A stretch of DNA of 64,000 bases, from the NCBI GenBank assembly GCA_002269645.1, contig NIVC01002275.1, positions 1 to 64,000 of the forward strand, in the 5' to 3' direction. The notes below the pieces were generated by a model. The model did no database searches. It saw nothing but the letters and a program-made list of their open reading frames with translations, and had not been told where the DNA came from. Origin of the DNA: Macrostomum lignano (Eukaryota). The translations under genes were made by a program, and so were the position numbers. Shown piece after piece: positions 1 through 56,243 of this stretch (positions are counted from its first letter, which is position 1; the number at the start of each line of letters is the position of its first letter).

Positions 1-15202
<15,202 letters not shown>

Positions 15203-18857: not shown

Positions 18858-31391
<12,534 letters not shown>

Positions 31392-39200: not shown

Positions 39201-42200
39201 ATTTAGTGCGGCTATTAAATGGCCAGGGGGCCAATTATGGAGGTCAATTAGAGAAGGGGTCAATTAGAGAGGGGGTCAGTTAGGGAAGTCAATTAGGGAC
39301 GGTTAACTAGAGGGGTCAATTACTTCATAGAAAGTGTAGATTGATTGGGGGTCAATAAGGGATGATAAAAGGTAAACTAGGGACAGTTCGATAAGGGAGG
39401 TGGTTAATTAGAGGGTGTCAATTAGAGGGGTCAATTAGGGGTCAATTAAGGAGAGGGCCAATTAGAGGGGTCTCGATTGGGGAGGGGTAAATTAGAAAGG
39501 AAGGGGTCAATTAGAGAGGGAGGGTCAATTAGAGAGGGAGGGGTCAATTAGAGAGGGATCGATTAGAGGGGGTCAATTAGGAAGGGGTGGCTCGTATAGT
39601 TAGGCGTCAACTAGGATTTAGTGAAGAGAACACACAACTCACAAATCAAAATGAACTCGCATCGAACAGTGCCCAGTTCCAAATAGATTTTGCAATTTTG
39701 CCATCGTCTCAGATCGACTACCAGATTGAGCCAGCAGGTCATTCAACAACGCCTCAGTCACTTCGTCCATGGAAGTCGACAGTCCGCCTTGTTGCAGTCG
39801 AAACTCCAATATTGACGCCGGAACCGACTCTCGAGAATAGGACGACAAAGAATTACAAGCGTAGCCTTTAGAGCAGGCTGTGAGGACAGAGTGGGAGCTA
39901 CGATTGGCTAATACGCAGAATCTACCAGCAGCTGCCAGACTGGCAGAGGCTGATGAATACACCAGCCTGTTGGATGGTGTCTGGTCGACACCGAGCCACA
40001 TGGTGACAGAGTTGCTACCGGCTGATGATGCTGCTGTTGTTGCCAGGGGAATTGGAGAGCCAGTTTTCGCGTCGAGAATTCGACCGCATGCCACTGGGGA
40101 GTGGGGGTTTGGAAAACAGGATTAATAGCAGAGATTGAGAAAACCATCAATTCGTTCACATGCTACAATTTTAGCTTTCAAGGCACGGACTCAAACTTTT
40201 ATACAAGTTGTCAAGATAATGAAACTGAGGAGGCTGGCCCAGCAACTGAGGATCTAAAAGTCTGGCCCAGAAATTGAGGATCTGGGAGGCTGGCCCAGCA
40301 GCTGACACTCTGGGAGGCTGGCCCAGCAACTGACACTGGGAGGCTAGCCCAGCAATTGAGATCTGAGAGGCTGGCCCAGCAACTGACACTCTGGGAGGCT
40401 GGCCCAGCAATTGAGATCTGGGAGGCTGGCCCAGCAATTGAGGATCTGGGAGGCTGGCCCAGCAACTGACACTGGGAGGCTAGCCCAGCAATTGAGATCT
40501 GAGAGGCTGGCCCAGCAACTGACACTCTGGGAGGCTGGCCCAGCAATTGAGATCTGGGAGGCTGGCCCAGCAATTGAGGATCTGGGAGGCTGGCCCAGCA
40601 ACTGACACTGGGAGGCTGGCCCAGCAACTGACACTGGGAGGCTGGCCCAGCAACTGACACTGGGAGGCTGGCCCAGCAGCAGACACTCTGGGAGGCTGGC
40701 ACAGCAACTAAGTAATTTGATGCACTATTTATATTAAGTAGTATGCTAGACTTATTATTGTATTTATAAAGGGTCAGTGGATTACCGTATCGCTTGTAGA
40801 AGTTGGTCAGAACATTTAACAGTGCCAGCTGATTGTCTCTGTACAGGCCGGGCAGACTACCAGCAGCCGGTGTAGAACAGCTGTTTAATCGGAGCGACAT
40901 CTGCGAAAAATTTATTGTGCAATTCAATTAATAAATATAATTTTACTGAGGACTGCATTGAGGATCTGGGATCACAGAATTACATTGAGGATCTGTGGGA
41001 CTCTATTGAGGATCTTGGGATTTTATTGGGGATCTGGGGATTCTATTGAGATCTGGGGATTCTATTGAGATCTGGGGATTCTATTGAGATCTGGGGATTC
41101 TATTGGGGATCTGGTGATTCTATTGAGATCTGGGGATTCTATTGAGATCTGGGGATTCTATTGAGGATCTGGGGATTCTATTGAGATCTGGGGATTCTAT
41201 TGAGATCTGGGGATTCTATTGAGATCTGGGGACTCTATTGAGGATCTGGGGATTCTATTGAGGATCTGGGATTCTATTGAGGATCTGGGGATTCAATTGA
41301 GGATCTGGGGATTCAATTGAGGATCTGGGGATCTATTGAGGATCTGGGGATTCTATTGAGGATCTGGGGATTCTATTGAGGATCTGGGATTCTATTGAGG
41401 ATCTGGGGATTCTATTGAGGATCTGGGGATTCTATTGAGGATCTGGGATTCTATTGAGGATCTGGGGATTCTATTGAGGATCTGGGATTCTATTGAGGAT
41501 CTGGGATTCTATTGAGGATCTGGGGATTCTATTGAGGATCTGGGGATTCTATTGAGGATCTGGGATCTGGGGATTCTATTGAGGATCTGGGATCTGGGGA
41601 TTCTATTGAGGATCTGGGGATTCTATTGAGGATCTGGGATCTGGGGATTCTATTGAGGATTTGGGATCTGGAGATTCTATTGACGATCTGGGATCTGGAG
41701 ATTCTATGGAGATCTGGGATCTGGGGATTCTATCGAGGATTTGGGATCTGGGGATTCTATTGACGATCTGGGATCTGGAGATTCTATTGAGATCTGGGAT
41801 CTGGGGATTCTATTGAGAGCTAAAAAGGTGAAGTGTAGAGCTCACAGACGCAGCGCCAAGACTATTCTGAAAGTGGTTCAACAACTGCAGCTCTCTAGAG
41901 TCGCCACCGCCTCCAACCGTGACCGCAGAGTCAGCAATCGGTCTAACCAAAGCTCCATCAACCAGCTTGCTGGAGATGAAGTGCTTAGCCAAAGATTTAA
42001 CCAATCTAACAACAGTGCTCAAATTCTGCGATAGATCAGTCGATGCCAATCTTGCAATACTCGAGTCGTTAGTGAACCCAGTCCGAAGCGCCATAAATAG
42101 TACTGGCGAAGTCAATTGCTCAGTAGAGTTTTGCATGACAGACACTAGCGATTCCACAGCTGTAGCGGAGCTCAACAACTCAGTGTTAGAGCAATCAGCT

Positions 42201-45200
42201 GATGATCCATTGGTGATTGACAGTTTAGTAGAATTATTACTGCTACTGAATAGCACCGGGACAATTGTAATTCGTAAATTGTTTAGTAGGCTGCGCAGCT
42301 CGTCTGATTGGTTGTAGCCTGAGGTGGGAAGGAAGATCGACGGCAGTTTAGGGGGGGGGGGTCAAGTGACCTCTCTGGTGCAATCCTAAACTCAAATATT
42401 TTTGTCGTCACTATCCTATATTCACAGATGATAACCGCTAGTTCAGAAGGGTCAAATGACCTCCAAAAAGCAGTTAATAATAAAGCTACTAATCTCTCTA
42501 CACTACCTAATAATAGTCTCCGTTATTTCAGGGGGGTCCAATTGACCTCGCTAAAGCAGTTAAAAAAGAAGCAACTAATGTATCTTCACTACCCACTAGT
42601 GTCCGTTATTTAATGGGGGGTCAAATGACCTCCCTCAGCTGCAGTTAATAATAAAGCTTCTAATCTATGTCTCTACACTATCCAACAACCAACTGGATTA
42701 GAAGGGGGGGTCAAGCGACCTTTTATTTTATTCTCACAGGCTAACATAATTGAATCTTAGGGGGGGGTCAAATCAAATGACCTCCACCGTAAACAAGCGC
42801 ACGCACCTGCAGCCAAATGCCTAGCCAATCGTAACAAAACTTCGCCAGTTGCGCTCTCAAATTTGTTCAGCGTGCCAACAAGCAGAGCGCCTGGTAGGCT
42901 ATTTTTAGCATCATCGTCATCGATTCGTCCGCACAGAGTTAGAGCGGTCACCCCATCTGCTAGACTGCGCACAGTCACCAGGCCAGGATACTGCCTAGCT
43001 AAATCTTTCGACTGCTGTCGATAATCGGCAATTGTTGGCAAAAATTCTGAAGCTAAATTGGCCTTCAAACTGAAATCCTGAGCTGCTGACCAATCGGCAA
43101 ATGGGCGAATGCGTAGAGTCGCATTCAGCTGCACTGCCGCCTCGTCTGTGACGGTCACGGTAGCTGAGTAGCTCGAGTACCTGCGGCCGGGTGGTTAATG
43201 TCCAGGTGATTAGTTCGGTGTCCGAAAACTTCATCTAAGGATCTGCCTAGCAACTGAGGATCTGGGAGGCTGGCCCAGAAACTGACACTCTGGGAGGCTG
43301 GCCCAGCAACTGAGGATCTGGGAGGCTGGCCCAGCAACTGAGGATCTGGGAGGCTGGCCCAGCAACTGAGGATCTGGGAGGCTGGCCCAGCAACTGAGGA
43401 TCTGGGAGGCTGGCCCAGCAACTGAGGATCTGGGAGGCTGGCCCAGCAACTGAGGATCTGGGAGGCTGGCCCAGCAACTGAGGATCTGGGAGGCTGGCCC
43501 AGCAACTGAGGATCTGGGAGGCTGGCCCAGCAACTGAGGATCTGGGAGGCTGGCCCAGCAACTGAGGATCTGGGAGGCTGGCCCAGCAACTGAGGATCTG
43601 AGAGGCTGGCCCAGCAACTGAGGATCAGGGAGGCTGGCCCAGCAAATGAGGATCTGGAAGGCTGGCCCAGCAACTGAGGATCTGGGAGGCTGGCCCAGCA
43701 ACTGAGGATCTGGGAGGCTGGCTTAGCAGCTGAGAATCTGGGAGGCTGGCTTAGCAGCTGAGGATCTGGGAGGCTGGCTTAGCAGCTGAGGATCTGGGAG
43801 GCTGGCCCAGAAACTGAGGAACTGGGAGGCTGGCCCAGAAACTGAGGAACTGGGAGGCTGGCTTAGCAGCTGAGGATCTGGGAGGCTGGCTTAGCAGCTG
43901 AGGATCTGGGAGGCTGGCCCAGAAACTGAGGAACTGGGAGGCTGGCCCAGAAACTGAGGAACTGGGAGGCTGGCCCAGAAACTGAGGAACTGGGAGGCTG
44001 GCCCAGAAACTGAGGAACTGGGAGGCTGGCCCAGAAACTGAGGAACTGGGAGGCTGGCTTAGCAGCTGAGGATCTGGGAGGCTGGCTTAGCAGCTGAGGA
44101 TCTGGGAGGCTGGCCCAGAAACTGAGGAACTGGGAGGCTGGCCCAGAAACTGAGGAACTGGGAGGCTGGCCCAGAAACTGAGAATCTGGGAGGCTGGCCC
44201 AGAAACTGAGAATCTGGGAGGCTGGCTTAGCAGCTGAGGATCTGGGAGGCTGGCCCAGAAACTGAGGAACTGGGAGGCTGGCCCAGAAACTGAGGAACTG
44301 GGAGGCTGGCCCAGAAACTGAGGAACTGGGAGGCTGGCTTAGCAACTGAGGAACTGGGAGGCTGGCTTGGCAACTGAGGATCTGGGAGGCTAGCTTAGCA
44401 GCTGAGGATCTGGGAGGCTGGTGGCTCAGCAACTGAGGATCTGGGAGGCTGGCCCAGCAACTGAGGATCTGGGAGGCTGGCCAAGCAACTGAGGATCTGA
44501 GAGACTGGCCCAGCAACTGAGGATCTGGGAGGCTGGCCCAGCAACTGAGGATCTGGGAGGCTGGCCCAGCAACTGAGGATCTGGGAGGCTGGCCCAGCAA
44601 CTGAGGATCTGGGAGGCTGGCCAAGCAACTGAGGATCTGAGAGACTGGCCCAGCAACTGAGGATCTGGGAGGCTGGCCAAGCAACTGAGGATCTGAGAGA
44701 CTGGCCCAGCAACTAAGGACAGTTGAAGCCGGCCAAGCCCCAACAAACTCACCCGCGCTTAACAAACCGCAGCGTGTACGACCCAGGAGCCAACAGTCTC
44801 CAATAGTCGCCATCCTGAGCAGTCAGCACAGCGTGATCAATGCCATCAACCAGGACGCTAACAGCAGACAAAGGTGCTCCAGTATCGAAGTCCAGCACGA
44901 ATCCGCGGACGCCTTTGTGCACAGCTGACATGAACACTAACAGGGGGTAGAAATTCTCAGACCAATACCTGGGCAGCTCGGCAGCGTAGGGATGCTTATT
45001 ACAGCTGAGCTCTAGCGTCAGTTCAAAGCAGTTCGTATTCAGATAATTGTAGTCCTGCATGCCGCCGTACAGGCTGTACCACTGGGCCCCGTTAGTGATG
45101 CCGTCTGTGAATCGTTCTGTGAGGTAAGCTGGACATCTGTGCTGGCTGGTCATCCGGGGGTGACTGCTGGAGTAGGCTCTGGCCAGCTGGCGAAATGTGG

Positions 45201-48200
45201 CATCGTCTGGAGCTCTGGAATTCACAGTGTTGCGACGCGATCGATCAATTATGAAATCTGATGCCATATAGCATTGATCTGTTTGGGTATTATGGCTAAT
45301 AAGTATTATAAAAATGTAATTTAACTTGATCATAAGGAACCAAGGACTACGTCATAAGGAATCCAAGAATCGGGTTATAAAAATTCAAGGATTGGGTCAT
45401 AATTAGGAATCTAGGATTGAGTCACAATACGAGCTAATTCAAGGATTGGGTCATGAAGAATCAAATATTGCGTCATAAGGAACCAAGGATTGGGTCATAA
45501 GAATTTAAGGATTGGGTCATAAGAATTCAAGGATTGGGTCATAAGAATTCAAGGATTGGGTCATAAAGAATCAAATATTGCGTCATAAGGAACCAAGGAT
45601 TGCGTCATAAGGAATCCAAGAATAGGGTTATAAAATTCAAGGATTGGGTCATAAGGAATCTAAGGATTGGATCATAAGAATTCTGGGAATGGAAATGAAG
45701 ATTTTCTGTGTCATTCGAATTTAGGGATTGGATCATAGGGATTGTCTGATTAGGTTAAAAACGCTTTTACAAGATTGGTCATTGAGATTTTTTTACTGTT
45801 TTTTTACGACTACGGCCCGATTACATTCGTATTATAACAATCAAAGCATCGCAGCTTACTTAGAGTAGACGCTAGCGCCCTCCTTGGTGCCGTCGAACGG
45901 ATAGTTTGCAACAACGGCGCCGCCGTGCAAATTAGCGCTGAGGACAAACGGCCATCTGAGTATGCGCGAAGGAAGTGAAATATAGAGTTTAAAAAGAAAT
46001 GCTATTATGTCTCGCTTTTACATGTCGTCAAGGTCAATCGGAATTTCTTAAAGTCAAACAATCGGAATTTTCCAAAGTCAAACAATTAGGAGCTTTTAGG
46101 GTCAAACGATTGAATTTTTCAAAGTCAAACAATTAGGAGCTTTTAGGGTCAAACGATTGAATTTTTCAAAGTCAAATAATCAGAACTTTTGAGGTCAAAC
46201 AATCTGATGTTTTATAAGGTCAAAAAATTAATTTTTTTCAAGGTCAAACAGTTGAAATTTTTCAAGGTCAAATAATCGGCATTTTCCAAGGCCAAACAAT
46301 CGGAATTTTACAAGGTCAAACAGTTGGAATTTTCCAAGGTCAAACAATTGGAATTTTCTAAGGTCAAACAATCGGAATTTTACAAGGTCAAACAGTTGGA
46401 ATTTTCCAAGGTCAAACAATCGGAATTTTACAAGGTCAAATGATCGGTACTTTTCAAGGTCAAACTATTGGAATTTATTTAAGGCCAAACAATTTTACTT
46501 TTTAAGGTCAAACAATCGGAATATTCCAAGGTCAAACAATTGGAATTTTCCAAGGTCAAACGCGGAAATTTCCAAGGTCAAACAATCGGGTTTCTCCAAA
46601 ATTTTCTCAGGGTATTTCAGGGTATCTCAGATATCTCATCTCAGGTATTTCAGGGTATCTAAGAGTACTTATTTCTAAAAGCTCAGCAAAAACGAAACCC
46701 CCTAACCTGGCCAGCCAGGCGCGCACAGCCGCAGTCTCCGGCTGCTCCGGTTTCTCGTCCGGTTCGCCGGCGCGAAATTGATCGGGAAAATTTCTATTCA
46801 AATCGATGCCATTAGCGTTAGACCGGCCAATAACGCCGTTAGAATCGCCAGCATGGGAACTCTCGTATCCGTCTGGGTTCATGCTGGGCATGATGTGCAC
46901 CCGAGTGCTGGCCAGCAGATCTTTGACTAACGGAGTTCGGTCGTAATTGCGGCAAAGAAAATCGGCTAAATAAAGAAGCACTTCCCGGCTCACTACTTCG
47001 TTGCCGTGCATGTTGCCAACGTACTTGAATTCGGGTACGCCTGGCAACAGTGAAGTCAAGGTGGGGTGTGCATATATAAGTTGCGAGAATTTCCAATAAA
47101 ACTTGAGGAACTTGGAAATTCGCCTATATCAAGATCAAATAAGTTTTTTAGTCCCTATCAAGGTCAAGCTATCTGAAAATCCCCATTGAAGTCAAGTTAT
47201 TTGGAATTCCCCATCAAGATTGAGTTATTTGGAATTCCCCATCAAGATTGAGTTATTTGGAATTCCCCATCAAGATAGAGTTATTTGGAATTCCCCATCA
47301 AGATTGAGTTATTTGGAATTCCCCATCAAGATAGAGTTATTTGGAATTCCCCATCAAGATAGAGTTATTTGGAATTCCCCATCAAAGTCAATTAATATGG
47401 AATTTCCTATCAAGGTCACGTTTTTTGGAATTCCCCACCAAGGTCAATTTTTGGAATTTCCCACCAAGGTTATTTTTTTGGAATTTCCTATCAAGGTCAA
47501 GTCATTTATAATTATCTAGATAGTTATTATCTATCAAGATTAATATAAAAACTCAGTAGGCATATAAAAAATTTAATACTACTACATCGATCGACACTAG
47601 CTACCGATATGTATCGAACGGAAAAAAATAACCAACGGAGAAAAGGCACAAACCTGGCCTATGCGATCCAGGCAACTGGCCGGAAAACTCAATAACCCAC
47701 AGTTCTCGATTTTGAACAGATTTTCCAATCGAATAAAGGCGAGTCACGCTTGGACAAGCTGAATGAATTCTGTGCAGGTAGGCCGTCAGAGCGTCGTAAT
47801 TATGGTGCCTGGAGGAAATCCGATTAGTAACGATTATTAAGTCAGTATTTGAATATAATACTTAAATTTCGCATTACTGCCCATAGACAGAATTTCTGTT
47901 GGCCTCTCTTTAACTGTCTCTCCCTCTACCTGTCTCCCTCTACCTGTCTCCCTCTACCTGTCTCTCTCTACCTGTCTCTCCCTCTACCTGTCTCTCTCTA
48001 TCTGTCTCTCTCTACCTGTCTCTCTCCCTCTACCTGTCTCTCTCCCTCTACCTGTCTCTCCCTCTGCCTGTCTCTCTCCCTCTACCTGTCTCTCTTCTAC
48101 CTGTCTCTCCCTCTACCTGTCTCTCTCTACCTGTCTCTCTCTCTACCTGTCTCTCTCTACCTGTCTCTCCCTCTACCTGTCTCTCTCTACCTGTCTCTCT

Positions 48201-50703
48201 CTCTACCTGTCTCTCTTCTACCTGTCTCTCCCTCTGCCTGTCTCTCTCCCTCTACCTGTCTCTCTTCTACCTGTCTCTCCCTCTACCTGTCTCTCTCTAC
48301 CTGACTCTCTCTACCTGTCTCTCCCTCTGCCTGTCTCTCTTCTACCTGTCTCTCTCTCTCTACCTGTCTCTCTCTACCTGTCTCTCTCTACCTGTCTCTC
48401 TCTATCTGTCTCTCTTCTACCTGTCTCTCCCTCTGCCTGTCTCTCTCCCTCTACCTGTCCCTCTTCTACCTGTCTCTCCCTCTGCCTGTCTCTCTTCTAC
48501 CTGTCTCTCTCCCTCTACCTGTCTCTCTCCCTCTACCTGTCATTCTCTACCTACATCTCTATCTCTATAAAATAAAAAACAGTAAGCAAACTCACACAAG
48601 CGACTTGCTATCAACTGGAACATAGTCTTTGAACACTTTCCGTTCTCGATCTGATCGCATTTGATTTGTAAATTTGACAAGCCTCAATATTGGCGAAGAT
48701 TCGTTCCGCGGGTACTGATCGCCGACACTAAGAATTGAGAAGGCGGATAAAAAACCTATCAGCAGCATAGCAACTAGTATGTCTCGTCAGCTAATATGTC
48801 ATCGTTAGTACTCGTAATTCAAAAACATTTTAATTTGAAAATCAGACAAATGCTTATTATTAATTCATACTGAAGCATAGATAGTCGCTATACCAGTCAT
48901 TCTCGTAATCTACTTTGTCATAATATTTAAAAAGCGAAGGACTTACAGACTCTAGATAAAGTCTGGTATAGTAGTACAATTATGGAAAACAACATATAAG
49001 CGAAACTCGATATCAGACAAATGCCTCATTGAAATTTCATAACTGGCACAAACTGAAATTTGCACCTGTCAATCTCGTCATCTATTCTGTCATCATTAGC
49101 GAGTTTATATAAATACTAACTATTCCCTACATTAGAGTCTCGTTCTCAGACAAATGCCTCATTAAGATCACGGAGCAGACACTGATTATGCCTGTCAGTT
49201 CGTCATCTAAATTGTCATCACTGCTCACACAATGACCTAAAGCACTCTATGTACTTGATAAGCTCATAAATCATATAAATCTAAGATATAAACTCAGGAC
49301 TCAGGGCTCAGACAAATGCCTCATTAAATTTCACTAATTGGCACAAACTACTCGAGTTTGCACCTGTCAATCTCGTCATCTATTGTCATCACAGCGAGTC
49401 CGCATAGTCACTAACAATGTGCATTGAGCAATCAAGTCTGTAAGCCGGAATTAACATCCACCAGCAGCCAGGCAGCTCTGAAGTCAGCGACAGCTGCAGC
49501 GGTGTGCTGTTGCCAGCTGGGTTGCTCTGGCACCAGTATTAAACTTGACCGGGCTTGACAACTAATTGCATGGCAACTAGCACCCATTGGTCAAGGGATC
49601 AAATCTGGTGCCGTGTGCTTATCTGATTGCAGGGCAACTAGCACCCATTGGTCAAGGGATCAAATCTGGTGCCGTGTGTTTATCTGATTGCAGGGCAACT
49701 AGCACCCATTGGTCAAGGGATCAAATCTGGTGCCGTGTGCTTATCTGATTGTATGGCAACTGGCACCCATTGGTCAAGGGATCAAATCTGGTGCCGTGTG
49801 CTTATCTGATTGCAGGGCAACTAGCACCCATTGGTCAAGGGATCAAATCTGGTGCCGTGTGCTTATCTGATTGCAGGGCAACTAGCACCCATTGGTCAAT
49901 AGTCCATCAGTCCAGCTTATCTTTGACATTTGACATTATATTAAGAAAAGACAAACTTTATTTCCAATGGGGGAACAAAAACAACTTCAGTTGTGCAGCT
50001 TCGCTCACCTGACGTCTCGACGCAATCTCAGTCTGTATTCATGGTCATCAGCCAGGACTCCCCAGTTGATAAACTGCCATTGCAAGTGATTAGTCAAATT
50101 AAACGCCCGATGCCTCGCTTTTAACGCGCCGCTTCGATAGCAATTGTCTATGGTAATGATGGATTTAACCTTGCAGCCATTGTCAGCCAGATTGTTAACC
50201 AACTGTTCAACTAACTCAGGCTGTCCGCTTAAATCTTTTTCGCAGGCAAGAATTTGACATATTCGCTTCTTAGTTATGGATTCATAACCGACCAAGTCTA
50301 ATTGACGCAATGCTTTTAAAACGTTTGTATTGTTGCTCCTAGTTGGTAGTAGAAATTCTGCAACAATTTTACTCCTTGTCGAGGTTGAAGATGGCAAATT
50401 AACAAAGTCTTTTAGTAGCATCAGTTGCTTAGCAACTGAACTAGCAGCAGCTTGACTAGTCGCTGCGTAGGTTAATATCAGCATTGGTTTGACTGACACC
50501 TGATCAGCGCTATCATCGCTGCTTGATAACCGATAAACATTAACACCTTCAAGGTTACTGATTGCGAATCTTGGCTGAGTTGTAACATTTTCAGCTAATA
50601 ATAACGCCAGCTGGGATAGCCGCAACAACATAATTGTCAGCATTATAAGCCATCGGTTGCCATGGAAACGGGAAAGACGATTGGCATTTGAATTTGGCAG
50701 CAT
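36294..50703 (-). CDS. CPD: Carboxypeptidase D-like metallocarboxypeptidase (M14B), type I membrane protein, about 1500 aa
   Basis: Exons 50703-50009, 48727-48596, 47808-47654, 47040-46707, 45955-45860, 45214-44753, 43180-42807, 42318-41846, 40900-40786, 40093-39643, 38874-38190, 37443-37122, 36556-36294; all GT-AG and phase-consistent. Domain 1 is intact: [56 protein letters not shown], and a transthyretin-like KGVRGFV segment. Two degenerate repeats follow, then a TM ([17 protein letters not shown]) and a tail with YSKV and acidic DPEEVY. Confidence 0.9.
36595..37110. repeat. Minisatellite, 23-nt unit
   Basis: CCCAATCAGCCTCACTTTCAGTG repeated. Confidence 0.95.
37655..38110. repeat. AT-rich minisatellite, about 33-35-nt unit
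   Basis: ATTAACACCTGAATAATAGGATCACTAATTAAGGG variants. Confidence 0.85.
39235..39585. repeat. Degenerate G-rich tandem repeat (GGGGTCAATTAGAG)
   Basis: Direct observation. Confidence 0.75.
40225..40705. repeat. 27-nt CAGATCCTCA-family minisatellite (inverted orientation)
   Basis: GGAGGCTGGCCCAGCAACTGAGGATCTG variants. Confidence 0.95.
40950..41815. repeat. Minisatellite, about 20-nt unit with GAGGATCTG core
   Basis: GAGGATCTGGGGATTCTATT repeated. Confidence 0.95.
43250..44715. repeat. 27-nt CAGATCCTCA-family minisatellite (inverted)
   Basis: AACTGAGGATCTGGGAGGCTGGCCCAGC repeated. Confidence 0.97.
45335..45700. repeat. Minisatellite, about 22-nt unit
   Basis: GGATTGGGTCATAAGAATTCAA variants. 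Confidence 0.85.
46030..46590. repeat. Minisatellite, 24-nt unit
   Basis: AAGGTCAAACAATCGGAATTTTCC variants. Confidence 0.9.
47165..47500. repeat. Minisatellite, 27-nt unit
   Basis: GAGTTATTTGGAATTCCCCATCAAGAT repeated. Confidence 0.9.
47915..48570. repeat. CT-rich minisatellite (TCTACCTGTCTCTC)
   Basis: Direct observation. Confidence 0.9.
48842..48923 (-). ncRNA. Degenerate U15-like C/D snoRNA copy (possible pseudogene)
   Basis: C box altered to TTATGA; D' guide TAGATTACGAG has a mismatch; D guide shortened to GCATTTG-T-CTGA. Confidence 0.55.
49013..49096 (-). ncRNA. SNORD15: Box C/D snoRNA, U15/SNORD15-like (subfamily B)
   Basis: Minus strand: ATGATGA (C box)...TAGATGACGAG-A-TTGA (D' guide and box)...ATGAGGCATTTG-T-CTGA (D guide and box). 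Terminal stem AACTCG/CGAGTT. Both guides are complementary to the conserved LSU rRNA segment GCCAAAUGCCUCGUCAUCUAA. Confidence 0.85.
49146..49221 (-). ncRNA. SNORD15: Box C/D snoRNA, U15-like (subfamily A, shifted D' register)
   Basis: GTGATGA...TTAGATGACGA-A-CTGA...ATGAGGCATTTG-T-CTGA on the minus strand. Confidence 0.85.
49308..49392 (-). ncRNA. SNORD15: Box C/D snoRNA, U15-like (subfamily B)
   Basis: GTGATGA...TAGATGACGAG-A-TTGA...ATGAGGCATTTG-T-CTGA; flanking GGACTC/GAGTCC stem. Confidence 0.85.
49567..49897. repeat. 58-60-nt minisatellite (copy 1 of duplicated cassette)
   Basis: GGCAACTAGCACCCATTGGTCAAGGGATCAAATCTGGTGCCGTGTGCTTATCTGATTGCA, about 5.5 units. Confidence 0.95.
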
Positions 50704-51202
50704 GTCTCCTTATGTATTACGATGCGTGCATGCAAAAAGCACTCTAGATGGAATGTAGCTCGAAGATATTCTGAAATGTCAAAGTATAAAAAGTAATTGA
50801 TAGTTCAGAAATTATCATTTTACAGACGAATAACTAACTAAATAATTTATCAATATTACAGACATCTAATACTAAAAGCTAATGAGATATTTTTTAATTA
50901 CTGACACCTGACACGTTTTTAAGGCACTCACTGACACCTAACACCCAACTTTACAATTTAAATGTAAACCCAAAAAACATTATCTGTGCTATACTAAAAC
51001 CGAAATCATTAGTAAATCAAACAAACCACCATTTAAACGATATGATATTAAAAAGGCGGCAAATGTTCTTTTACCCGATACAAATGGTATTTTATATTTA
51101 TTCATAATAGGAAAGTATTAACAAGTCGTTAAAAAGTCGTTTGAGTAAGAGAAAAATGAACCTTGAAAACTATAATCATGGATTCATAATAATTTTTGCA
51201 AC

Positions 51203-52172
51203 ACTGAGGATCTGGGAGGCTGGCCCAGCAACTGAGGATCTGGGAGGCTGGCACAGCAACTGACACTCTGGGAGGCTGGCCCAGCAACTGACACTCTGGG
51301 AGGCTGGCCCAGCAACTGAGGATCTGTGAGACTGGCCCAGCGACTGAGGATCTGGGAGGCTGGCCCCGCAACTGAGGATCTGGGAGGCTGGCCCAGCAAC
51401 TGGGGATCTGGGAGGCTGGCCCAGCAACTGAGGATCTGGGAGGCTGGCCCAGCAACTGAGGATCTGGGACGCTGGCCCAGCAACTGAGGATCTGGGAGGC
51501 TGGCCCAGCAACTGAGTATCTGGGAGGCTGGCCCAGCAACTGAGGATCTGGGAGGCTGGCCCAGCAACTGACATTCTGGGAGGCTGGCCCAGCAACTGAC
51601 ACTCTGGGAGGCTGGCCCAGCAACTGAGGATCTGGGAGGCTGGCCCAGCAACTGAGGATCTGGGAGGCTGGCCAGCAACTGAGGATCTGGGAGGCTGGCC
51701 CAGCAACTGAGGATCTGGGAGGCTGGCCCAGCAACTGAGGATCTGGGAGGCTGGCCCAGCAACTGACACTCTGGGAGGCTGGCCCAGCAACTGACACTCT
51801 GGGAGGCTGGCCCAACAACTGACACTCTGGGAGGCTGGCCCAGCAACTGACACTCTGGGAGGCTGGCCCAGCAACTGACACTCTGGGAGGCTGGCCCAGC
51901 AACTGACACTGAGAGGCTGGCCCAGCAACTGACACTGAGAGGCTGGCCCAGCAACTGACACTGAGAGGCTGGCCCAGCAACTGACACTGAGAGGCTGGCC
52001 CAGCAACTGACACTGAGAGGCTGGCCCAGCAACTGACACTGAGAGGCTAGCCCAGCAACTGACACTGAGAGGCTGGCCCAGCAACTGACACTGAGAGGCT
52101 GGCCCAGCAACTGACACTGAGAGGCTGGCCCAGCAACTGACACTGAGAGGCTGGCCCAGCAACTGAGGATCT
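51203..52172. repeat. 27-nt CAGATCCTCA-family minisatellite (LEM-CPD spacer)
   Basis: Same unit as 43250-44715. Confidence 0.97.
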
Positions 52173-52958
52173 AGAAGAAATACATTTTGTTTTTCCGTTC
52201 AAAGACGTTCTAGTAGACTCCAAATGGATTTTAACTAATTTGCTGCAGATTGCATAATAACTATTACAAAATGGCGCAAGGCAAAAGTTTTAATATACGT
52301 AAATTCTGATCACTTTAGTACAAAAATACTTTAACTACTACTTGTTACTATTAGTAGTACGAGCATTACTAATTGATTTAAAGTATGCAAGCAATATAAA
52401 CTGGGACAGCGAAGTTGCACCCGGCTAGAGAGAGTCATAAAATGCGGTAAGCAAAAACACCTACTGGATAATAATATTTAATAAATTGAACAAGTGAGTG
52501 GCAGAGGTACAAAAGGAGCAGTTTGTATACATAAATCTTTATTTAAAAAAACTTTGCAAAGTAATGTTTGAAAAAAATTGACGGTGTTATTATAAATAAA
52601 TGTGAATACAGCAACGGGTTACTAAAAAGAAATTACTGCCTTACTTCCATACGACACACTTTTACAATAATAGAACTTACATGTATAGCCATGTTTATAT
52701 TATAACTGAATAAATCACAGACTATATTCAACACAAAGACTATATTCCAACACAAAGACCCTATTTAACACAAAGACCCTCTACAGCACAGACTCCACCC
52801 TAGTCAACACTAAGACCCTACTCAACACAAAGACCCAGGTTATATTCAAAGAAGTGCACCGGGAACCAGGGGAATTTAAAGTTCGCGCAGTTAAGTCAGG
52901 TCAATAAAAAACGGACACAACGAACATGATCAGGTAGACTGCGATGCAATCTCCGCAT

Positions 52959-55900
52959 TCAATGAGAGATCTCTGGCACCGGATTTTCGTACAGAGGATC
53001 AAAATGAAGCAGGAGAAAAGCTACAGCGCCAATCAGAGCCAGGGCTAGAATGCAGTTGAGCAGAGACGGACGAAACCGACTGGGAGCTGCGGCGGCTCCT
53101 GGGGCCGGACGAGCGCCAGACGGCGAGCCCACCTTACCATAGTAACCAGTTCCGGCGTCATTCTCGTGCAACGGGCGTCGGCGATAGGTTTCGCGGAAAA
53201 CTGAACCGCCACCGCTGCCGAAGCTGCCATCGTCGGCTGGTGAAGCTCCGGGACGTTGCGGAGTGGAATCGAACCTGCGACCTGCTGGGCTGGATGCGGC
53301 AGCGGCGGCTGCGCCTGCGGCGGAGAACATCGAAGCGTCGCGAGTGTCCGGACTGCGAATTAACAATGGGAAAGACTTGTTGGGCGAATTTACACTGACA
53401 AGTACTTGTTAGCTACAGTACACTGACAAAGATTTGTTTGTAAATGTACATAGAAAAAGTCTGAATTGCCCAACGTACACTGACAAAGACACAATGACCC
53501 AATGTACAAAGACTCAATGGCCCAATGTACACTGACAAAGACTCAATGGCCCAATATACACTAACAAAGACTCAATGGCCCAATGTACACTGAAAAAGAC
53601 TCAATGGCCCAATGTACACTGACTAAGACTCAATGGCCCAATATACACTGACAAAGACTCAATGGCCAAATGTACACTGAAAAAGACTCAATGCCTCAAT
53701 GTACACTGACAAAGCCTCAATGGCCCAATATACACTAACAAAGACTCAATGGCCCAATGTACACTGAAAAAGAATCAATGGCCCAATGTACACTGAAAAA
53801 GACTCAATGGCCCAATATACACTGACAAAGACTCAATGGCCCAATGTACACTGACATACTCAATAGTCCAATGTACACAAACAGAAAAAGTTATATCTTT
53901 AAATACTTGTTAAGAATCTCAAAAAGTTACCTGTTGTAAACTCAAACAAATAGCCAAAACTGAAAATGTTCATAAATAACATTTTTATTCCAGCACCGAA
54001 AAAACTTATACATAATAATACAATCGCTGATAACCATTATCAACAGAATTTTCCTACCAAATAGCTATAGTGACAGGAACACAGCAGTCACAAACAGTGA
54101 TGTTGATCGACAAGTCGTACTTTAAATTAGATGGCCTGTGTGGTAATTCAATCAGATTCTTTACGTTTTTACTGATAATTAAGATGAGAAAAGTGCGAAA
54201 TATTCTACTCAAAGACACCAACCAATTTCCTATATATTATGAGTTTCACACATCGCAAGTAGTAAAGTTGAGTTCAATAAAACAAACGATTTATTACCTT
54301 ACTGGCTGTCTTCTGGCGCCGTCTCCGTCACTGACATCGCTTTCGCTAAAAATACAATAAGTATTATTTATATTTACAACTCTCCATAATAGATCAATAA
54401 TGGAATTAAAATCCATAGGATATACAATAAATTAAGCTTTTGGACTCAGACAAATGCCTCATTAAGATCACTTTAAAAAGGCACAGGTTATGCCTGTATC
54501 AGTTCGTCATCTAAATTGTCATCATTGTAGTTTAGGCTATTATTATCAAACATAAAAAAATCGCGACACTCGCTATCAGACAAATGCCTCTTTGAATTTC
54601 ATAACTGGCACAAACTGATTATTTGCACCTGTCAATCTCGTCATCTATTCTGTCATCATTAGCGAGTTGATAAAAACTGACTAAACTCATAAACACTATG
54701 CAATAGGGTCTTGTTCTCAGACAAATGCCTCATTAAGATCACAGAGCAGACACTGATTATTTATGTCTGTCAGTTCGTCATCTAAATTGTCATCACTGCT
54801 AACACAATGACCCAAAGTACTCTATGTACTTGATAAGCTCATAAATAATATAAATCTAAGATATATACTCAGGACTCAGGGCTCAGACAAATGCCTCATT
54901 AAATTTCACTAATTGGCACAAACTACTCGAGTTTGCACCTGTCAATCTCGTCATCTATTGTCATCACAGCGAGTCCGCACAGTCACTAACAATGTGCATT
55001 GAGCAATAAAGCTATCTGTAAGCCGGAATTAACATCCACCAGCAGCCAGGACGCTCTGAAGTCAGCGACAGCTGCAGCGGTGTGCTGTTGCCAGCTGGGT
55101 TGCTCTGGCACCAGTATTAAACTTGACCGGGCTTGACAACTAACTGCATGGCAACTAGCACCCATTGGTCAAGGGATCAAATCTGGTGCCGTGTGCTCAT
55201 TTAATTGCATGGCAACTAGCACCCATTGGTCAAGGGATCAAATCTGGTGCCGTGTGCTTATCTGATTGCATGGCAACTAGCACCCATTGGTCAAGGGATC
55301 AAATCTGGTGCCGTGTGCTTATCTGATTGCATGGCAACTAGCACCCATTGGTCAAGGGATCAAATCTGGTGCCGTGTTTATCTGATTGCATGGCAACTAG
55401 CACCCATTGGTCAAGGGATCAAATCTGGTGCCGTGTGCTCATTTAATTGCATGGCAACTAGCACCCATTGGTCAAGGGATCAAATCTGGTGCCGTGTGCT
55501 TATCTGATTGCATGGCAACTAGCACCCATTGGTCAAGGGATCAAATCTGGTGCCGTGTGCTTATCTGATTGCATGGCAACTAGCACCCATTGGTCAAGGG
55601 ATCAAATCTGGTGCCGTGTTTATCTGATTGCAGGGCAACTAGCACCCATTGGTCAAGGGATCAAATCTGGTGCCGTGTGCTTATCTGATTGCATGGCAAC
55701 TAGCACCCATTGGTCAAGGGATCAAATCTGGTGCCGTGTTTATCTGATTGCATGGCAACTAGCACCCATTGGTCAAGGGATCAAATCTGAGTGATTATCC
55801 AGCATATTAAGCTGCATGGCAACTAAGCGGACTAAGACTAGGACTAAGACTTAATTTATGGATAAAGACAACCTTACTATAATTACTAGTTTAAATTCTG

Positions 55901-56243
55901 TCTCAAAATCAGACAAATGCCTTATAAAAATTCACATTAAAAAGCATAGATTTATTTGCTATGCCAATCATACTCGTCATCTATTTTGTCATCATTTTTG
56001 AGAGCAGATTTTTTGCACAAAAAGAATCAAATCCTTGATTTGTAAATAAAAGAACACTTACCTATCTTCAGCTTGGTCGGTGCTGCACACAGACACAAAC
56101 TGTTGTCCAGAGCGCAGTCTATATAATTTACGACGCATCAAGTGCCTAGTAGTGTCAGTAACTGGGGGCACATTTGCGTCGCCCATGTGTACAGCAAGGT
56201 CATCGCGTAGTTCCGCATCAGTTAGTTGATTAATTTCGTCCAT
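52959..56243 (-). CDS. LEM-domain inner nuclear membrane protein (emerin/LAP2beta-like), 207 aa
   Basis: Exons 56243-56062, 54345-54298, 53352-52959 (phase 2/2). N-terminal LEM motif (INQLTDAELRDDL...PPVTDTTRHLMRRKLYRL), low-complexity linker, C-terminal TM (CILALALIGAVAFLLLHF) and a short lumenal tail. Confidence 0.85.
53390..53880. repeat. Minisatellite, 30-nt unit
   Basis: CAATGTACACTGACAAAGACTCAATGGCCC variants. Confidence 0.9.
54446..54525 (-). ncRNA. SNORD15: Box C/D snoRNA, U15-like (subfamily A)
   Basis: ATGATGA...TTAGATGACGA-A-CTGA...ATGAGGCATTTG-T-CTGA. The internal region has diverged from the 49146/54717 copies, but boxes and guides are conserved. Confidence 0.85.
54576..54659 (-). 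ncRNA. SNORD15: Box C/D snoRNA, U15-like (subfamily B)
   Basis: ATGATGA...TAGATGACGAG-A-TTGA...GAGGCATTTG-T-CTGA; perfect 8-bp terminal stem ACTCGCTA/TAGCGAGT. Confidence 0.88.
54717..54796 (-). ncRNA. SNORD15: Box C/D snoRNA, U15-like (subfamily A)
   Basis: GTGATGA...TTAGATGACGA-A-CTGA...ATGAGGCATTTG-T-CTGA. Confidence 0.85.
54883..54967 (-). ncRNA. SNORD15: Box C/D snoRNA, U15-like (subfamily B)
   Basis: Appears identical to the 49308-49392 copy. Confidence 0.85.
55145..55790. repeat. 58-60-nt minisatellite (copy 2 of duplicated cassette)
   Basis: Same unit, about 10.5 units. Confidence 0.95.
55909..55995 (-). ncRNA. SNORD15: Box C/D snoRNA, U15-like (divergent)
   Basis: ATGATGA...TAGATGACGAG-T-ATGA...AGGCATTTG-T-CTGA; perfect terminal stem TCTCAAAA/TTTTGAGA. 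Confidence 0.8.

What the first reader, a model, noticed from the sequence alone, without database searches (positions are those of the whole stretch)
48842..55995. Nine U15-like dual-guide C/D snoRNAs packed as multi-snoRNA clusters inside single introns of two unrelated genes
Seen: nine 76-87-nt minus-strand units with C, D' and D boxes and, in several cases, terminal stems. Five lie in LEM intron 1 and four in CPD intron 1, mostly 50-90 nt apart, with no convincing exons between them. Known: both guides pair with the conserved eukaryotic LSU rRNA segment GCCAAAUGCCUCGUCAUCUAA. By the +5 rule, the D guide targets the third A of CCAAA (yeast Am2281, the U15/snR13 site). The standard D' guide targets the G of CUCGU (yeast Gm2288, the snR75 site). 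Animal intronic snoRNAs are usually one per intron. Inference: a plant-like intronic polycistronic cluster that needs endonucleolytic processing, hosted by non-ribosomal genes.
Basis: partly seen in the sequence, partly recalled or inferred. Interest (0 to 1): 0.8.

Follow-up and report, generated by a model that had tools for sequence, protein, structure and literature searches.

The report
Flatworm U15-type snoRNA clusters in introns
Nine copies (eight intact, one decayed) of a small RNA that guides methylation of two neighbouring, universally conserved positions in large-subunit ribosomal RNA sit packed inside the first introns of two adjacent genes of the flatworm Macrostomum lignano; the RNA type and this layout are already known in plants and fruit flies, so this is a solid but ordinary new example.

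Summary
Nine minus-strand box C/D units (76-87 nt) carry an identical D guide plus D box, against 0.7 expected by chance. Their two guides match those of human SNORD15A, yeast snR13 plus snR75, and plant SNOR75.

The window is Macrostomum lignano contig NIVC01002275.1. Five units lie in intron 1 of a 207-aa LEM gene. My spliced model has the length of the annotated proteins and aligns without gaps to a homeologous copy. Four units lie in annotated intron 1 of the next gene, carboxypeptidase D.

The second cluster is a local ~0.9-kb segmental copy (94% identity) of the first, so the two hosts are neighbours, not independent acquisitions.

Against a homeologous locus, boxes and guides show 0/211 differences. 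The rest of the intron shows 46/626 (p = 1.7e-6), so the units are under selection.

Caveats:
- Unit I has a broken C box and weak guides.
- No unit reaches any Rfam threshold.
- Units C, E and G have the D' box one nucleotide closer, which predicts a neighbouring U as target.
- Expression and endonucleolytic processing are untested.
- Multi-snoRNA introns are already described in rice and Drosophila.

Verdict: new member of a known kind, moderate interest.

The parts
55909..55995 (-). Unit A (type alpha), 87 nt. C box AUGAUGA, D' box AUGA, D box CUGA. A 7-bp terminal stem CUCAAAA/UUUUGAG lies directly outside the boxes.
   Evidence: flank duplex -12.6 kcal/mol, 0/500 shuffles as good; D' guide 11 bp to G, D guide 9 bp to A. 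Identical in homeologous loci L001 and L003. Best Rfam hit is Me28S-Am2589 at 29.2 bits, below the threshold of 37.
55145..55789 (.). 61-bp tandem array (10.7 copies) between units A and B, inside LEM intron 1.
   Evidence: Copy number differs among homeologous loci: 11, 5 and 3 occurrences of the repeat-core motif in the window, L001 and L003.
54883..54967 (-). Unit B (type beta), 85 nt. D' box UUGA. Internal 9-bp hairpin GGUGCAAAC/GUUUGUGCC. External stem GGACUC/GAGUCC.
   Evidence: Rfam TtnuCD10 gives a full-length alignment at 30 bits, sub-threshold.
54717..54796 (-). Unit C (type gamma), 80 nt. The D' box CUGA directly follows GACGAA, so the predicted D' target is the U after the G.
54576..54659 (-). 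Unit D (type delta), 84 nt. 7-bp terminal stem CUCGCUA/UAGCGAG.
   Evidence: (SNOR75 24 bits, plasmodium_snoR21 26.4 bits, both full-length and sub-threshold).
54446..54525 (-). Unit E (type epsilon), 80 nt, with the shifted D' box. It has no terminal stem and ends 100 nt upstream of the LEM intron 1 acceptor site.
   Evidence: (-2.4 kcal/mol). Acceptor position read.
54346..56061 (-). LEM gene intron 1 (GT at 56061, AG at 54346), holding units A-E and the 61-bp array.
   Evidence: The exons 56062-56243, 54298-54345 and 52959-53352 splice in frame into a 207-aa LEM-domain protein (Pfam LEM, E = 5.9e-08). It aligns without gaps at 97% identity to M. lignano PAA91803.1. The NCBI gene on the window's own contig has the same span and also encodes 207 aa.
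52959..56243 (-). LEM-domain host gene (BOX15_Mlig007042g1). Three coding exons encode a 207-aa protein with a C-terminal hydrophobic segment.
49565..49899 (.). Second copy of the 61-bp array (5.5 copies), at the upstream end of the duplicated module.
49000..49899 (-). Segmental duplicate of 54563-55475, comprising the array, a ~180-nt spacer and units beta, gamma and delta. 94% identity.
49308..49392 (-). Unit F (type beta), identical to unit B over the RNA and its near flanks.
49146..49221 (-). Unit G (type gamma), 76 nt, with the shifted D' box. Its external stem is weaker than that of unit C.
   Evidence: (-7.5 kcal/mol).
49013..49096 (-). Unit H (type delta), 84 nt. One mismatch in the terminal stem (UAUCGAG instead of UAGCGAG).
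   Evidence: (-7.3 kcal/mol).
48842..48924 (-). Unit I (type zeta), 83 nt, degenerate. C box AUUAUGA, a mismatch in the D' guide, and a D guide reduced to 7 bp. Probably non-functional in this locus.
   Evidence: Zeta copies with an intact C box and guides exist in L003 and L001.
47809..50008 (-). Annotated intron 1 of the carboxypeptidase D gene. It holds units F-I, the 61-bp array, a 14-bp array and the candidate alternative first exon.
   Evidence: UniProt A0A1I8JJW1 (P0122) joins ORF X residues 1-232 directly to HHNYDAL.... The donor AG|GTGAGC at 50009/50008 and the acceptor CAG|G at 47809/47808 are in phase. The NCBI gene on this contig starts at the ORF X ATG, window position 50703.
50009..50703 (-). 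CPD exon 1 (ORF X, 232 codons). It is lineage-specific, with no Pfam family and no homologue outside M. lignano.
   Evidence: The ORF is intact in L001 and L003. Between the window and L001, 19 codons differ non-synonymously and 9 synonymously.

Best explanation
These are genes for a U15-type box C/D small nucleolar RNA of the flatworm Macrostomum lignano.

Each ~80-nt RNA has a C box and a D box, brought together in most units by a terminal or external stem, which should form the kink-turn that recruits the methylation complex. An internal hairpin should bring the degenerate C' and D' boxes together.

The guide before the D box pairs with CCAAAUGCCUC(G) of LSU rRNA. It places the third A (yeast A2281, human A3764) at the fifth position. 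The guide before the D' box pairs with CUCGUCAUCUA. In units A, B, D, F and H it places the G at the base of helix 71 (yeast G2288, human G3771) at the fifth position. In units C, E and G the D' box is one nucleotide closer, so the adjacent U is predicted instead.

The family grew by local DNA duplication of a module: [alpha/zeta unit] - 61-bp array - spacer - beta - gamma - delta - [epsilon/zeta unit]. One module fills intron 1 of a LEM-domain gene. A partial copy sits in intron 1 of the neighbouring carboxypeptidase D gene.

Shown here: the architecture, guide complementarity, intronic position in the annotated models, the duplication, and purifying selection on boxes and guides.

Inferred, not shown: the units are transcribed as part of the host pre-mRNAs. 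Each assembles its own snoRNP. Internal units are freed by endonucleolytic cuts in the 50-90-nt spacers followed by exonucleolytic trimming up to the bound proteins.
For: Motif counts are far above chance.

Full-length but sub-threshold Rfam alignments go only to families for this rRNA site: Me28S-Am2589, snR75, SNOR75, snoZ5, SNORD15, TtnuCD10 and plasmodium_snoR21. The guide strings are identical to theirs.

The intact units form 9-12 contiguous pairs with the rRNA, with the expected nucleotide at position 5.

Human SNORD15A uses the same D'/D pair for G3771 and A3764 (PMC5027482). Yeast splits the pair between snR75 and snR13 (PMC4174444).

Selection: comparing the window with homeologous locus L001 across LEM intron 1, boxes plus guides show 0/211 differences. 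Internal loops show 14/202 and the rest of the intron 46/626 (Fisher p = 1.7e-6 and 3.5e-5).

The six sequence types share only boxes and guides. Their terminal stems and internal hairpins are built from different sequences.

Host models: the LEM model has the length of the annotated proteins and aligns without gaps. CPD exon 1 joins exon 2 in UniProt A0A1I8JJW1, and the NCBI gene starts at the same ATG.

Compact dual-guide units of this kind occur in at least 120 metagenome contigs, sometimes in tandem.
Against: No unit reaches the gathering score of any Rfam family.

No expression data could be consulted, so no mature RNA has been shown.

Complementarity was tested against the conserved eukaryotic segment taken from general knowledge.

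Unit I is degenerate, and G and H have weakened flank stems, so not every copy need be functional.

Concerted evolution among copies (for example, the gamma unit in the LEM intron of L001 resembles the window's G more than its C) could inflate apparent conservation. It would not, however, spare only boxes and guides.

Endonucleolytic release is purely inferred.
Confidence: 0.75

Rival explanations
1. The second cluster (F-I) is not in a CPD intron. ORF X is a separate upstream gene, or an upstream cistron of an operon. CPD mRNA would start at the ATG at 48768, after a cis- or SL trans-splice acceptor at 48775/48774. The snoRNAs would then lie in an intergenic, intercistronic or outron segment and be released from the discarded 5' RNA.
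For: An ORF at 48595-48768 begins [16 protein letters not shown]..., which looks like a signal peptide. It ends at a GT donor in the same phase as the ORF X donor, so it joins the M14 exon in frame.

An AG lies 5 nt upstream of that ATG and 68 nt downstream of unit I.

ORF X has its own stop codon overlapping the donor, with AATAAA about 45 nt downstream, conserved in L001.

ORF X is weakly constrained (19 non-synonymous against 9 synonymous codon changes) and has no homologue outside the species.

Against: Two independent annotations join ORF X to the CPD exons or start the CPD gene at its ATG. The ORF X donor stays GTRAGC in L001. The 58-codon ORF could be chance, and its 5' end overlaps a snoRNA relic.
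Confidence: 0.2
2. The multi-snoRNA introns are not resolved into single snoRNAs. Exonucleases stop at the outermost snoRNPs, giving long RNAs capped by snoRNPs at both ends (sno-lncRNA type). Only the outer units, or none, would act as free guides.
For: sno-lncRNAs are a described alternative product class of snoRNA processing (review PMC10557570); that they arise from introns holding two snoRNAs is my own knowledge. No endonuclease signal was identified in the spacers here. The spacer tested is not unusually structured (z = -0.55).
Against: All five units of the LEM intron, internal ones included, show complete conservation of both guides. That is expected only if each acts as a guide; an internal snoRNP within a longer RNA could still guide, so the argument is weak. 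Rice and Drosophila intronic clusters are described as snoRNA gene clusters.
Confidence: 0.12
3. Most copies are silent by-products of satellite-associated segmental duplication. Only one or a few units (for example E, at the canonical distance from a 3' splice site, or A) supply the cell's U15 function.
For: Copy number varies widely among homeologous loci: 9 in the window against at least 19 in each of L001 and L003. Chimeric and decayed units exist. Unit I is broken, and G and H have weaker stems.
Against: There are 0/211 differences in the functional elements of all five LEM-intron units at about 7% background divergence. F, G and H keep perfect boxes and guides.
Confidence: 0.15
4. The matches are chance, or a repeat family that merely resembles C/D snoRNAs.
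For: The region is very repeat-rich, and no Rfam family reaches threshold.
Against: Motif counts against shuffles. Two independent guides match adjacent known methylation sites. The selection pattern spares only boxes and guides.
Confidence: 0.01

Closest known systems
Human SNORD15A/B (U15; Rfam RF00067, clan CL00045)
   Same: Same two guides in the same positions. The D' guide GAUGACGAG targets LSU-G3771 and the D guide GAGGCAUUUGU-CUGA targets LSU-A3764 (PMC5027482). The last 26 nt align to the SNORD15 model. Both are intronic.
   Different: The human RNA is about 146 nt with a long internal region, and the full model does not align (17-19 bits against a threshold of 75). To my knowledge the human copies are single in their introns. 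Three units here have a shifted D' box.
Plant SNOR75 (RF02539), snoZ5 (RF01226), Tetrahymena TtnuCD10 (RF02287), Plasmodium snoR21 (RF01864)
   Same: All carry both guides in one RNA, and plant SNOR75 (87 nt) is as compact as the units here. They give full-length alignments covering the C box, D' guide, D guide and D box. The same compact form was found in at least 120 metagenome contigs, median 78 nt.
   Different: Internal sequences are unrelated, and scores are 20-30 bits against thresholds of 50-90. All 88 metagenome units keep one spacer nucleotide between GACGAG and the D' box, unlike units C, E and G.
Yeast snR13 and snR75; Drosophila Me28S-A2589 (RF00529) and Me28S-G2596
   Same: The same rRNA sites in helices 70/71 of LSU domain IV (PMC4174444). 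Unit A aligns over the full length of RF00529 at 29.2 bits.
   Different: In yeast the two jobs are split between two RNAs; a separate Drosophila Me28S-G2596 snoRNA (named) suggests the same there. The Drosophila consensus lacks the GAUGACGAG D' guide.
Intronic snoRNA gene clusters of rice and Drosophila melanogaster
   Same: Several snoRNA genes on the host's strand inside one intron of a host gene (PMC2780460).
   Different: Here all units are paralogues with one specificity. The module carries a satellite array and varies in copy number among homeologous loci. No flatworm case turned up in the paper searches made here. The Drosophila primary paper could not be read.

Membership tests
Box C/D snoRNA | C box RUGAUGA near the 5' end and D box CUGA near the 3' end | tested here: met
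   Eight of nine units have R-UGAUGA and all nine have CUGA. Unit I has AUUAUGA.
Box C/D snoRNA | Terminal or external stem that juxtaposes the C and D boxes | tested here: inconclusive
   Strong for A, B, C, D and F (-11.9 to -12.6 kcal/mol), weaker for G and H, absent for E and I. Only A, D, H and C beat shuffles at 5%. The stems use different sequences in different types.
Box C/D snoRNA | Internal D' and C' boxes | tested here: met
   D' is AUGA, UUGA or CUGA directly after the first guide. A C'-like xUGAxx lies 10-15 nt before the D guide. A type-specific hairpin sits between them.
Box C/D snoRNA | At least 9 nt of antisense upstream of D or D' to a known RNA target, with the modified nucleotide at position 5 | tested here: met
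   9-12 contiguous pairs for the eight intact units against the conserved LSU segment. That segment was taken from general knowledge, not from M. lignano 28S.
Box C/D snoRNA | Accumulates as a stable small RNA bound by fibrillarin, Nop56, Nop58 and Snu13 | not testable with these tools
   No expression or binding data were accessible.
SNORD15/U15 and its clan CL00045 | Guide specificity: D guide to A3764 (yeast A2281) and D' guide to G3771 (yeast G2288) | tested here: met
   Met for the D guide in all units. Met for the D' guide in A, B, D, F and H. Units C, E and G are shifted to the next U.
SNORD15/U15 and its clan CL00045 | Score at or above the Rfam gathering threshold of RF00067, RF01185, RF01226, or of RF02539 or RF00529 | tested here: not met
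   There are no matches at gathering. Best sub-threshold scores against their thresholds: 18.9 vs 75, 24.1 vs 40, 20.9 vs 60, 24 vs 50 and 29.2 vs 37. I therefore call the units U15-type by function and do not file them in any Rfam sequence family.
Intronic snoRNA gene cluster (rice/Drosophila type) | Two or more snoRNA genes, on the host's strand, within one intron | tested here: met
   LEM: the three-exon model reproduces the 207-aa length of the annotated proteins and aligns without gaps to a homeologous copy. CPD: the annotated exon 1 to exon 2 junction spans the cluster. Non-coding micro-exons cannot be excluded.
Intronic snoRNA gene cluster (rice/Drosophila type) | Individual snoRNAs released from the common intron (endonucleolytic, splicing-independent step) | not testable with these tools
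   Inference only.

The most novel reading that the evidence does not exclude
Within the amplified cluster, a one-nucleotide slip of the D' box (GACGAGA|UUGA became GACGAA|CUGA) created a second guide class: units C, E and G, and the gamma and epsilon copies in the other loci. This class would methylate the U next to the conserved Gm at the base of helix 71. M. lignano would then carry a lineage-specific Gm-Um doublet, a caught-in-the-act example of a new rRNA modification site arising by duplication and box slippage. This spacing was absent from all 88 compact dual-guide units recovered from metagenomes. It is kept in all three homeologous loci, and one copy even improves pairing (GACGAG|CUGA in L003).
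Probability: 0.3. Interest if true: 0.55.

Novelty: new member of a known kind. Interest (0 to 1): 0.4.

Why it matters
Flatworm snoRNAs are almost unannotated. A homology survey of Schistosoma found no unambiguous homologue of any known snoRNA except U3 (PMC2770079), and my searches found nothing on Macrostomum snoRNAs. This locus gives a secure, site-assigned U15-type snoRNA for a regenerative model flatworm.

It extends multi-snoRNA introns to a second animal phylum, in a species where RNAi is, to my knowledge, routine. The still unidentified animal nuclease that would separate such units could therefore be looked for.

The six sequence types are distinguishable by their loops. The 9 versus at least 19 copy-number differences between homeologous loci offer a natural dosage series. 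The shifted D' class makes a simple, testable prediction for RiboMeth-seq.

None of this overturns current understanding.

Tried and rejected
- Rfam at gathering thresholds over the whole window gave nothing. Only E-value mode gave the sub-threshold site-specific families.
- Protein search with ORF X in the word-indexed database gave nothing. The exhaustive representative search found only the species' own 763-aa model.
P0122 has no gene on record.
- The Drosophila primary paper on intronic clusters (PMC1370813) is not held. A search for Me28S-A2589 found no paper.
- I suspected the conserved ~180-nt spacer between the array and unit B might be another structured RNA. Its fold is not better than shuffles (z = -0.55), and the only Rfam hit is a weak mir-191 match (17.6 bits against 54). 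Rejected as unsupported.
- I guessed the ~1.2-kb inter-module sequence in L001 was a LINE fragment. Pfam finds nothing, so I withdraw that label.
- I tested whether ORF X could splice into the candidate exon at 48768. All nearby acceptors are in the wrong phase (worked out), so the two can only be alternative first exons.
- The organism was first guessed to be an insect, from the polyQ runs and the Drosophila Rfam hit. That was wrong: the LEM protein and an exact contig match show Macrostomum lignano.

Full report
**Observation.** Allowing one mismatch there are 10 matches against 0.71 expected, and no shuffle reaches 10. The C box plus D' guide motif lies upstream of the units, 8 matches against 0.56 expected. 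From C box to D box the units measure 87, 85, 80, 84, 80, 85, 76, 84 and 83 nt. Spacers within each cluster are 49-88 nt. Unit A is separated from B by a 61-bp tandem array. The description is therefore accurate, with one correction. Unit I (48842-48924) has the C box AUUAUGA, which lacks the G needed for the kink-turn, and its guides are weakened to 5 and 7 contiguous pairs around the target position.

**What the units are.** No Rfam family is matched at its gathering score. In E-value mode, the snoRNA-family matches that overlap the units are to Me28S-Am2589, snR75, SNOR75, snoZ5, SNORD15, Tetrahymena TtnuCD10 and Plasmodium snoR21. Several of these are full-length alignments in which the C box, GAUGACGAG plus D' box, GAGGCAUUUGU and CUGA line up while the interior does not. 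These families all serve one rRNA region.
- In yeast, snR13 guides Am2280/2281 and snR75 guides Gm2288 in helices 70/71 (PMC4174444).
- In human, SNORD15A is assigned G3771 through its D' guide and A3764 through its D guide (PMC5027482).

A pairing calculation against the conserved LSU segment (taken from general knowledge, not from this species) gives 9-12 contiguous pairs for the eight intact units. The D guide always places the third A of CCAAA at position 5. Membership in any Rfam sequence family is not established.

**Structure.** The nine units fall into six sequence types: alpha A, beta B/F, gamma C/G, delta D/H, epsilon E and zeta I. They share only boxes and guides. Flanking stems are strong for A, B, C, D and F (-11.9 to -12.6 kcal/mol) and are built from unrelated sequences, for example CUCAAAA/UUUUGAG in A and CUCGCUA/UAGCGAG in D. 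They are weaker in G and H and absent in E and I. Each type has its own hairpin between the D' and C' boxes. Unit E has no stem and ends 100 nt upstream of the LEM intron 1 acceptor. From my own knowledge, vertebrate intronic C/D snoRNAs sit at about this distance from the 3' splice site, which may help assembly. This last point is inference.

**Organism and hosts.** Splicing 56062-56243, 54298-54345 and 52959-53352 gives a 207-aa protein with a LEM domain. It matches Macrostomum lignano PAA91803.1 at 97% identity, without gaps and over the full length. The locus fetched for the cluster member PAA59336.1 is identical to the window over 21,042 nt. The window is therefore contig NIVC01002275.1 of assembly GCA_002269645.1, reversed. 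The annotated LEM gene has exactly my span and protein length, so no coding exon lies among units A-E.

The next annotated gene (1518 aa, Peptidase_M14) starts at window 50703, the ATG of a 232-codon ORF. UniProt A0A1I8JJW1 is 100% identical to that ORF over residues 1-232 and continues directly with HHNYDAL..., encoded from 47808. Annotated CPD intron 1 is thus 47809-50008 and contains units F-I. Both "single intron" claims hold at the level of annotated coding models.

**A complication in the CPD intron.** Sixty-eight nucleotides downstream of unit I there is an AG. Five nucleotides further on, an ATG opens a 58-codon [19 protein letters not shown]..., which looks like a signal peptide. It ends at a GT donor in the same phase as the ORF X donor and would join the M14 exon in frame. 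ORF X has no homologue outside the species and no Pfam domain. It is weakly constrained, with 19 non-synonymous against 9 synonymous codon differences from L001. Its stop codon overlaps the donor, followed by AATAAA. [quoted passage not shown] An alternative CPD transcript starting at this exon, with the snoRNAs in its outron, therefore cannot be excluded. I give it about 0.2.

**Origin.** The two clusters are not independent. Window 49000-49899 is a 94%-identical copy of 54563-55475, comprising the 61-bp array, a ~180-nt spacer and units beta, gamma and delta. The hosts are adjacent genes on the same strand, 2.3 kb apart.

Two further copies of the locus exist in the assembly, which carries a duplicated chromosome.
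- L001 is about 93% identical to the window. It has the five LEM-intron units plus at least 14 units after ORF X, arranged as at least four tandem ~2.2-kb modules.
- L003 is about 99% identical. It has 5 units plus at least 14.

These loci contain zeta units with intact C boxes, a delta/beta chimera, and decayed zeta-like units in front of each array. This suggests an ancestral module, [alpha/zeta]-array-spacer-beta-gamma-delta-[epsilon/zeta], amplified by unequal exchange.

**Evidence of function.** Aligning LEM intron 1 between the window and L001, with the array excluded, gives the following:

| Region | Differences |
|---|---|
| C box, D' guide, D' box, D guide and D box of the five units | 0 of 211 |
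| Internal loops of the units | 14 of 202 |
| Rest of the intron | 46 of 626 |

Fisher p is 1.7e-6 for the core against the rest of the intron, and 3.5e-5 for the core against the loops. Gene conversion among copies exists but would not spare only boxes and guides. The one core difference from L003 (GACGAA to GACGAG in unit E) improves pairing with the rRNA.

**Wider context.** Eighty-eight complete units have a median length of 78 nt. All keep one spacer nucleotide before the D' box, and several contigs carry tandem copies, for example five or six in L030. The compact dual-guide form is therefore widespread, and homotypic clusters are not unique. The shifted D' spacing of gamma and epsilon was not seen in that sample.

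**Mechanism.** Shown: the architecture, target complementarity, intronic position, duplication history and selection. Inferred: co-transcription with the hosts, independent snoRNP assembly on each unit, endonucleolytic cuts in the spacers, and exonucleolytic trimming (pathways reviewed in PMC10557570). Rivals are the outron reading for cluster 2, sno-lncRNA-type products, and silence of most copies.

[quoted passage not shown] The U15-type guide pair is ancient. What is new is a secure flatworm example, in a phylum where homology searches had found almost no snoRNAs (PMC2770079; none for Macrostomum), its satellite-linked copy-number variation, and the shifted D' class. Verdict: a genuine, selected U15-type snoRNA family in two neighbouring introns. 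It is a new member of a known kind, with interest 0.4.

Noticed in passing
window 48595-48768 (minus strand): Candidate alternative first coding exon of the carboxypeptidase D gene. An ATG opens [18 protein letters not shown]..., which looks like a signal peptide. The 58-codon ORF ends at a GT donor in phase with the M14 exon at 47808. An AG lies 5 nt upstream of the ATG and could be a cis- or SL trans-splice acceptor. It is not in either annotation.
   Followed up: partly
window 48784-48804 (minus strand; Rfam hit spans 48734-48807): Relic of a tenth unit: CGAUGAC-AUAUUAGCUGACGAG, that is, a C box and D' guide with 2 mismatches. It has no D guide, lies 35 nt downstream of unit I and overlaps the start of the candidate exon. 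Weak snR75 hit at 20.7 bits.
   Followed up: partly
window 50009-50703 (minus strand); L001 14522-15220; L003 14465-15160: CPD exon 1 (ORF X, 232 codons) has no homologue outside M. lignano and no Pfam domain. Between homeologues, 19 codons differ non-synonymously and 9 synonymously, yet the ORF is intact in all three loci. It may be a young, weakly constrained N-terminal extension.
   Followed up: partly
window 20773-21716, 40229-40709, 43245-44719, 51203-52172: The same 28-bp satellite (GCCCAGCAACTGAGGATCTGGGAGGCTG) forms at least four separate arrays in introns and intergenic DNA of this window. It also occurs in L001. It creates long spurious ORFs in all frames.
   Followed up: no
window 54968-55144 and 49393-49564 (minus strand): The ~180-nt GC-rich spacer between the 61-bp array and the beta unit differs from L001 at only about 4 positions. 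This is clearly less than the 7% intron background. Its fold is not significant (z = -0.55), and the only Rfam hit is a weak mir-191 match. The cause is unexplained; it could be gene conversion or an unknown element such as a promoter.
   Followed up: partly
L001 15344-22849; L003 16800-22701: In the two other copies of the locus, the snoRNA module after ORF X is tandemly amplified to at least 14 units each, with a ~2.2-kb period in L001. These include a delta/beta chimeric unit (L003, D-guide motif at 21949) and decayed zeta-like units in front of each array. The ~1.2-kb inter-module sequence in L001 has no Pfam match.
   Followed up: partly
L030 (metagenome contig Ga0126342_10019434), units within about 9-1611 of the locus: An unidentified eukaryote carries five or six near-identical 72-74-nt dual-guide U15-type units in tandem, about 130-630 nt apart. 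Plant-like SNOR75 pairs and triplets occur in L012, L024 and L035.
   Followed up: no
window 9176-15202 and 23017-30159 (plus strand): By eye only, ORFs here look like exons of an LRR/Ig-type membrane protein with long polyQ and polyA runs, and of an adenosylhomocysteinase-like gene interrupted by satellite arrays. Not checked with any tool.
   Followed up: no
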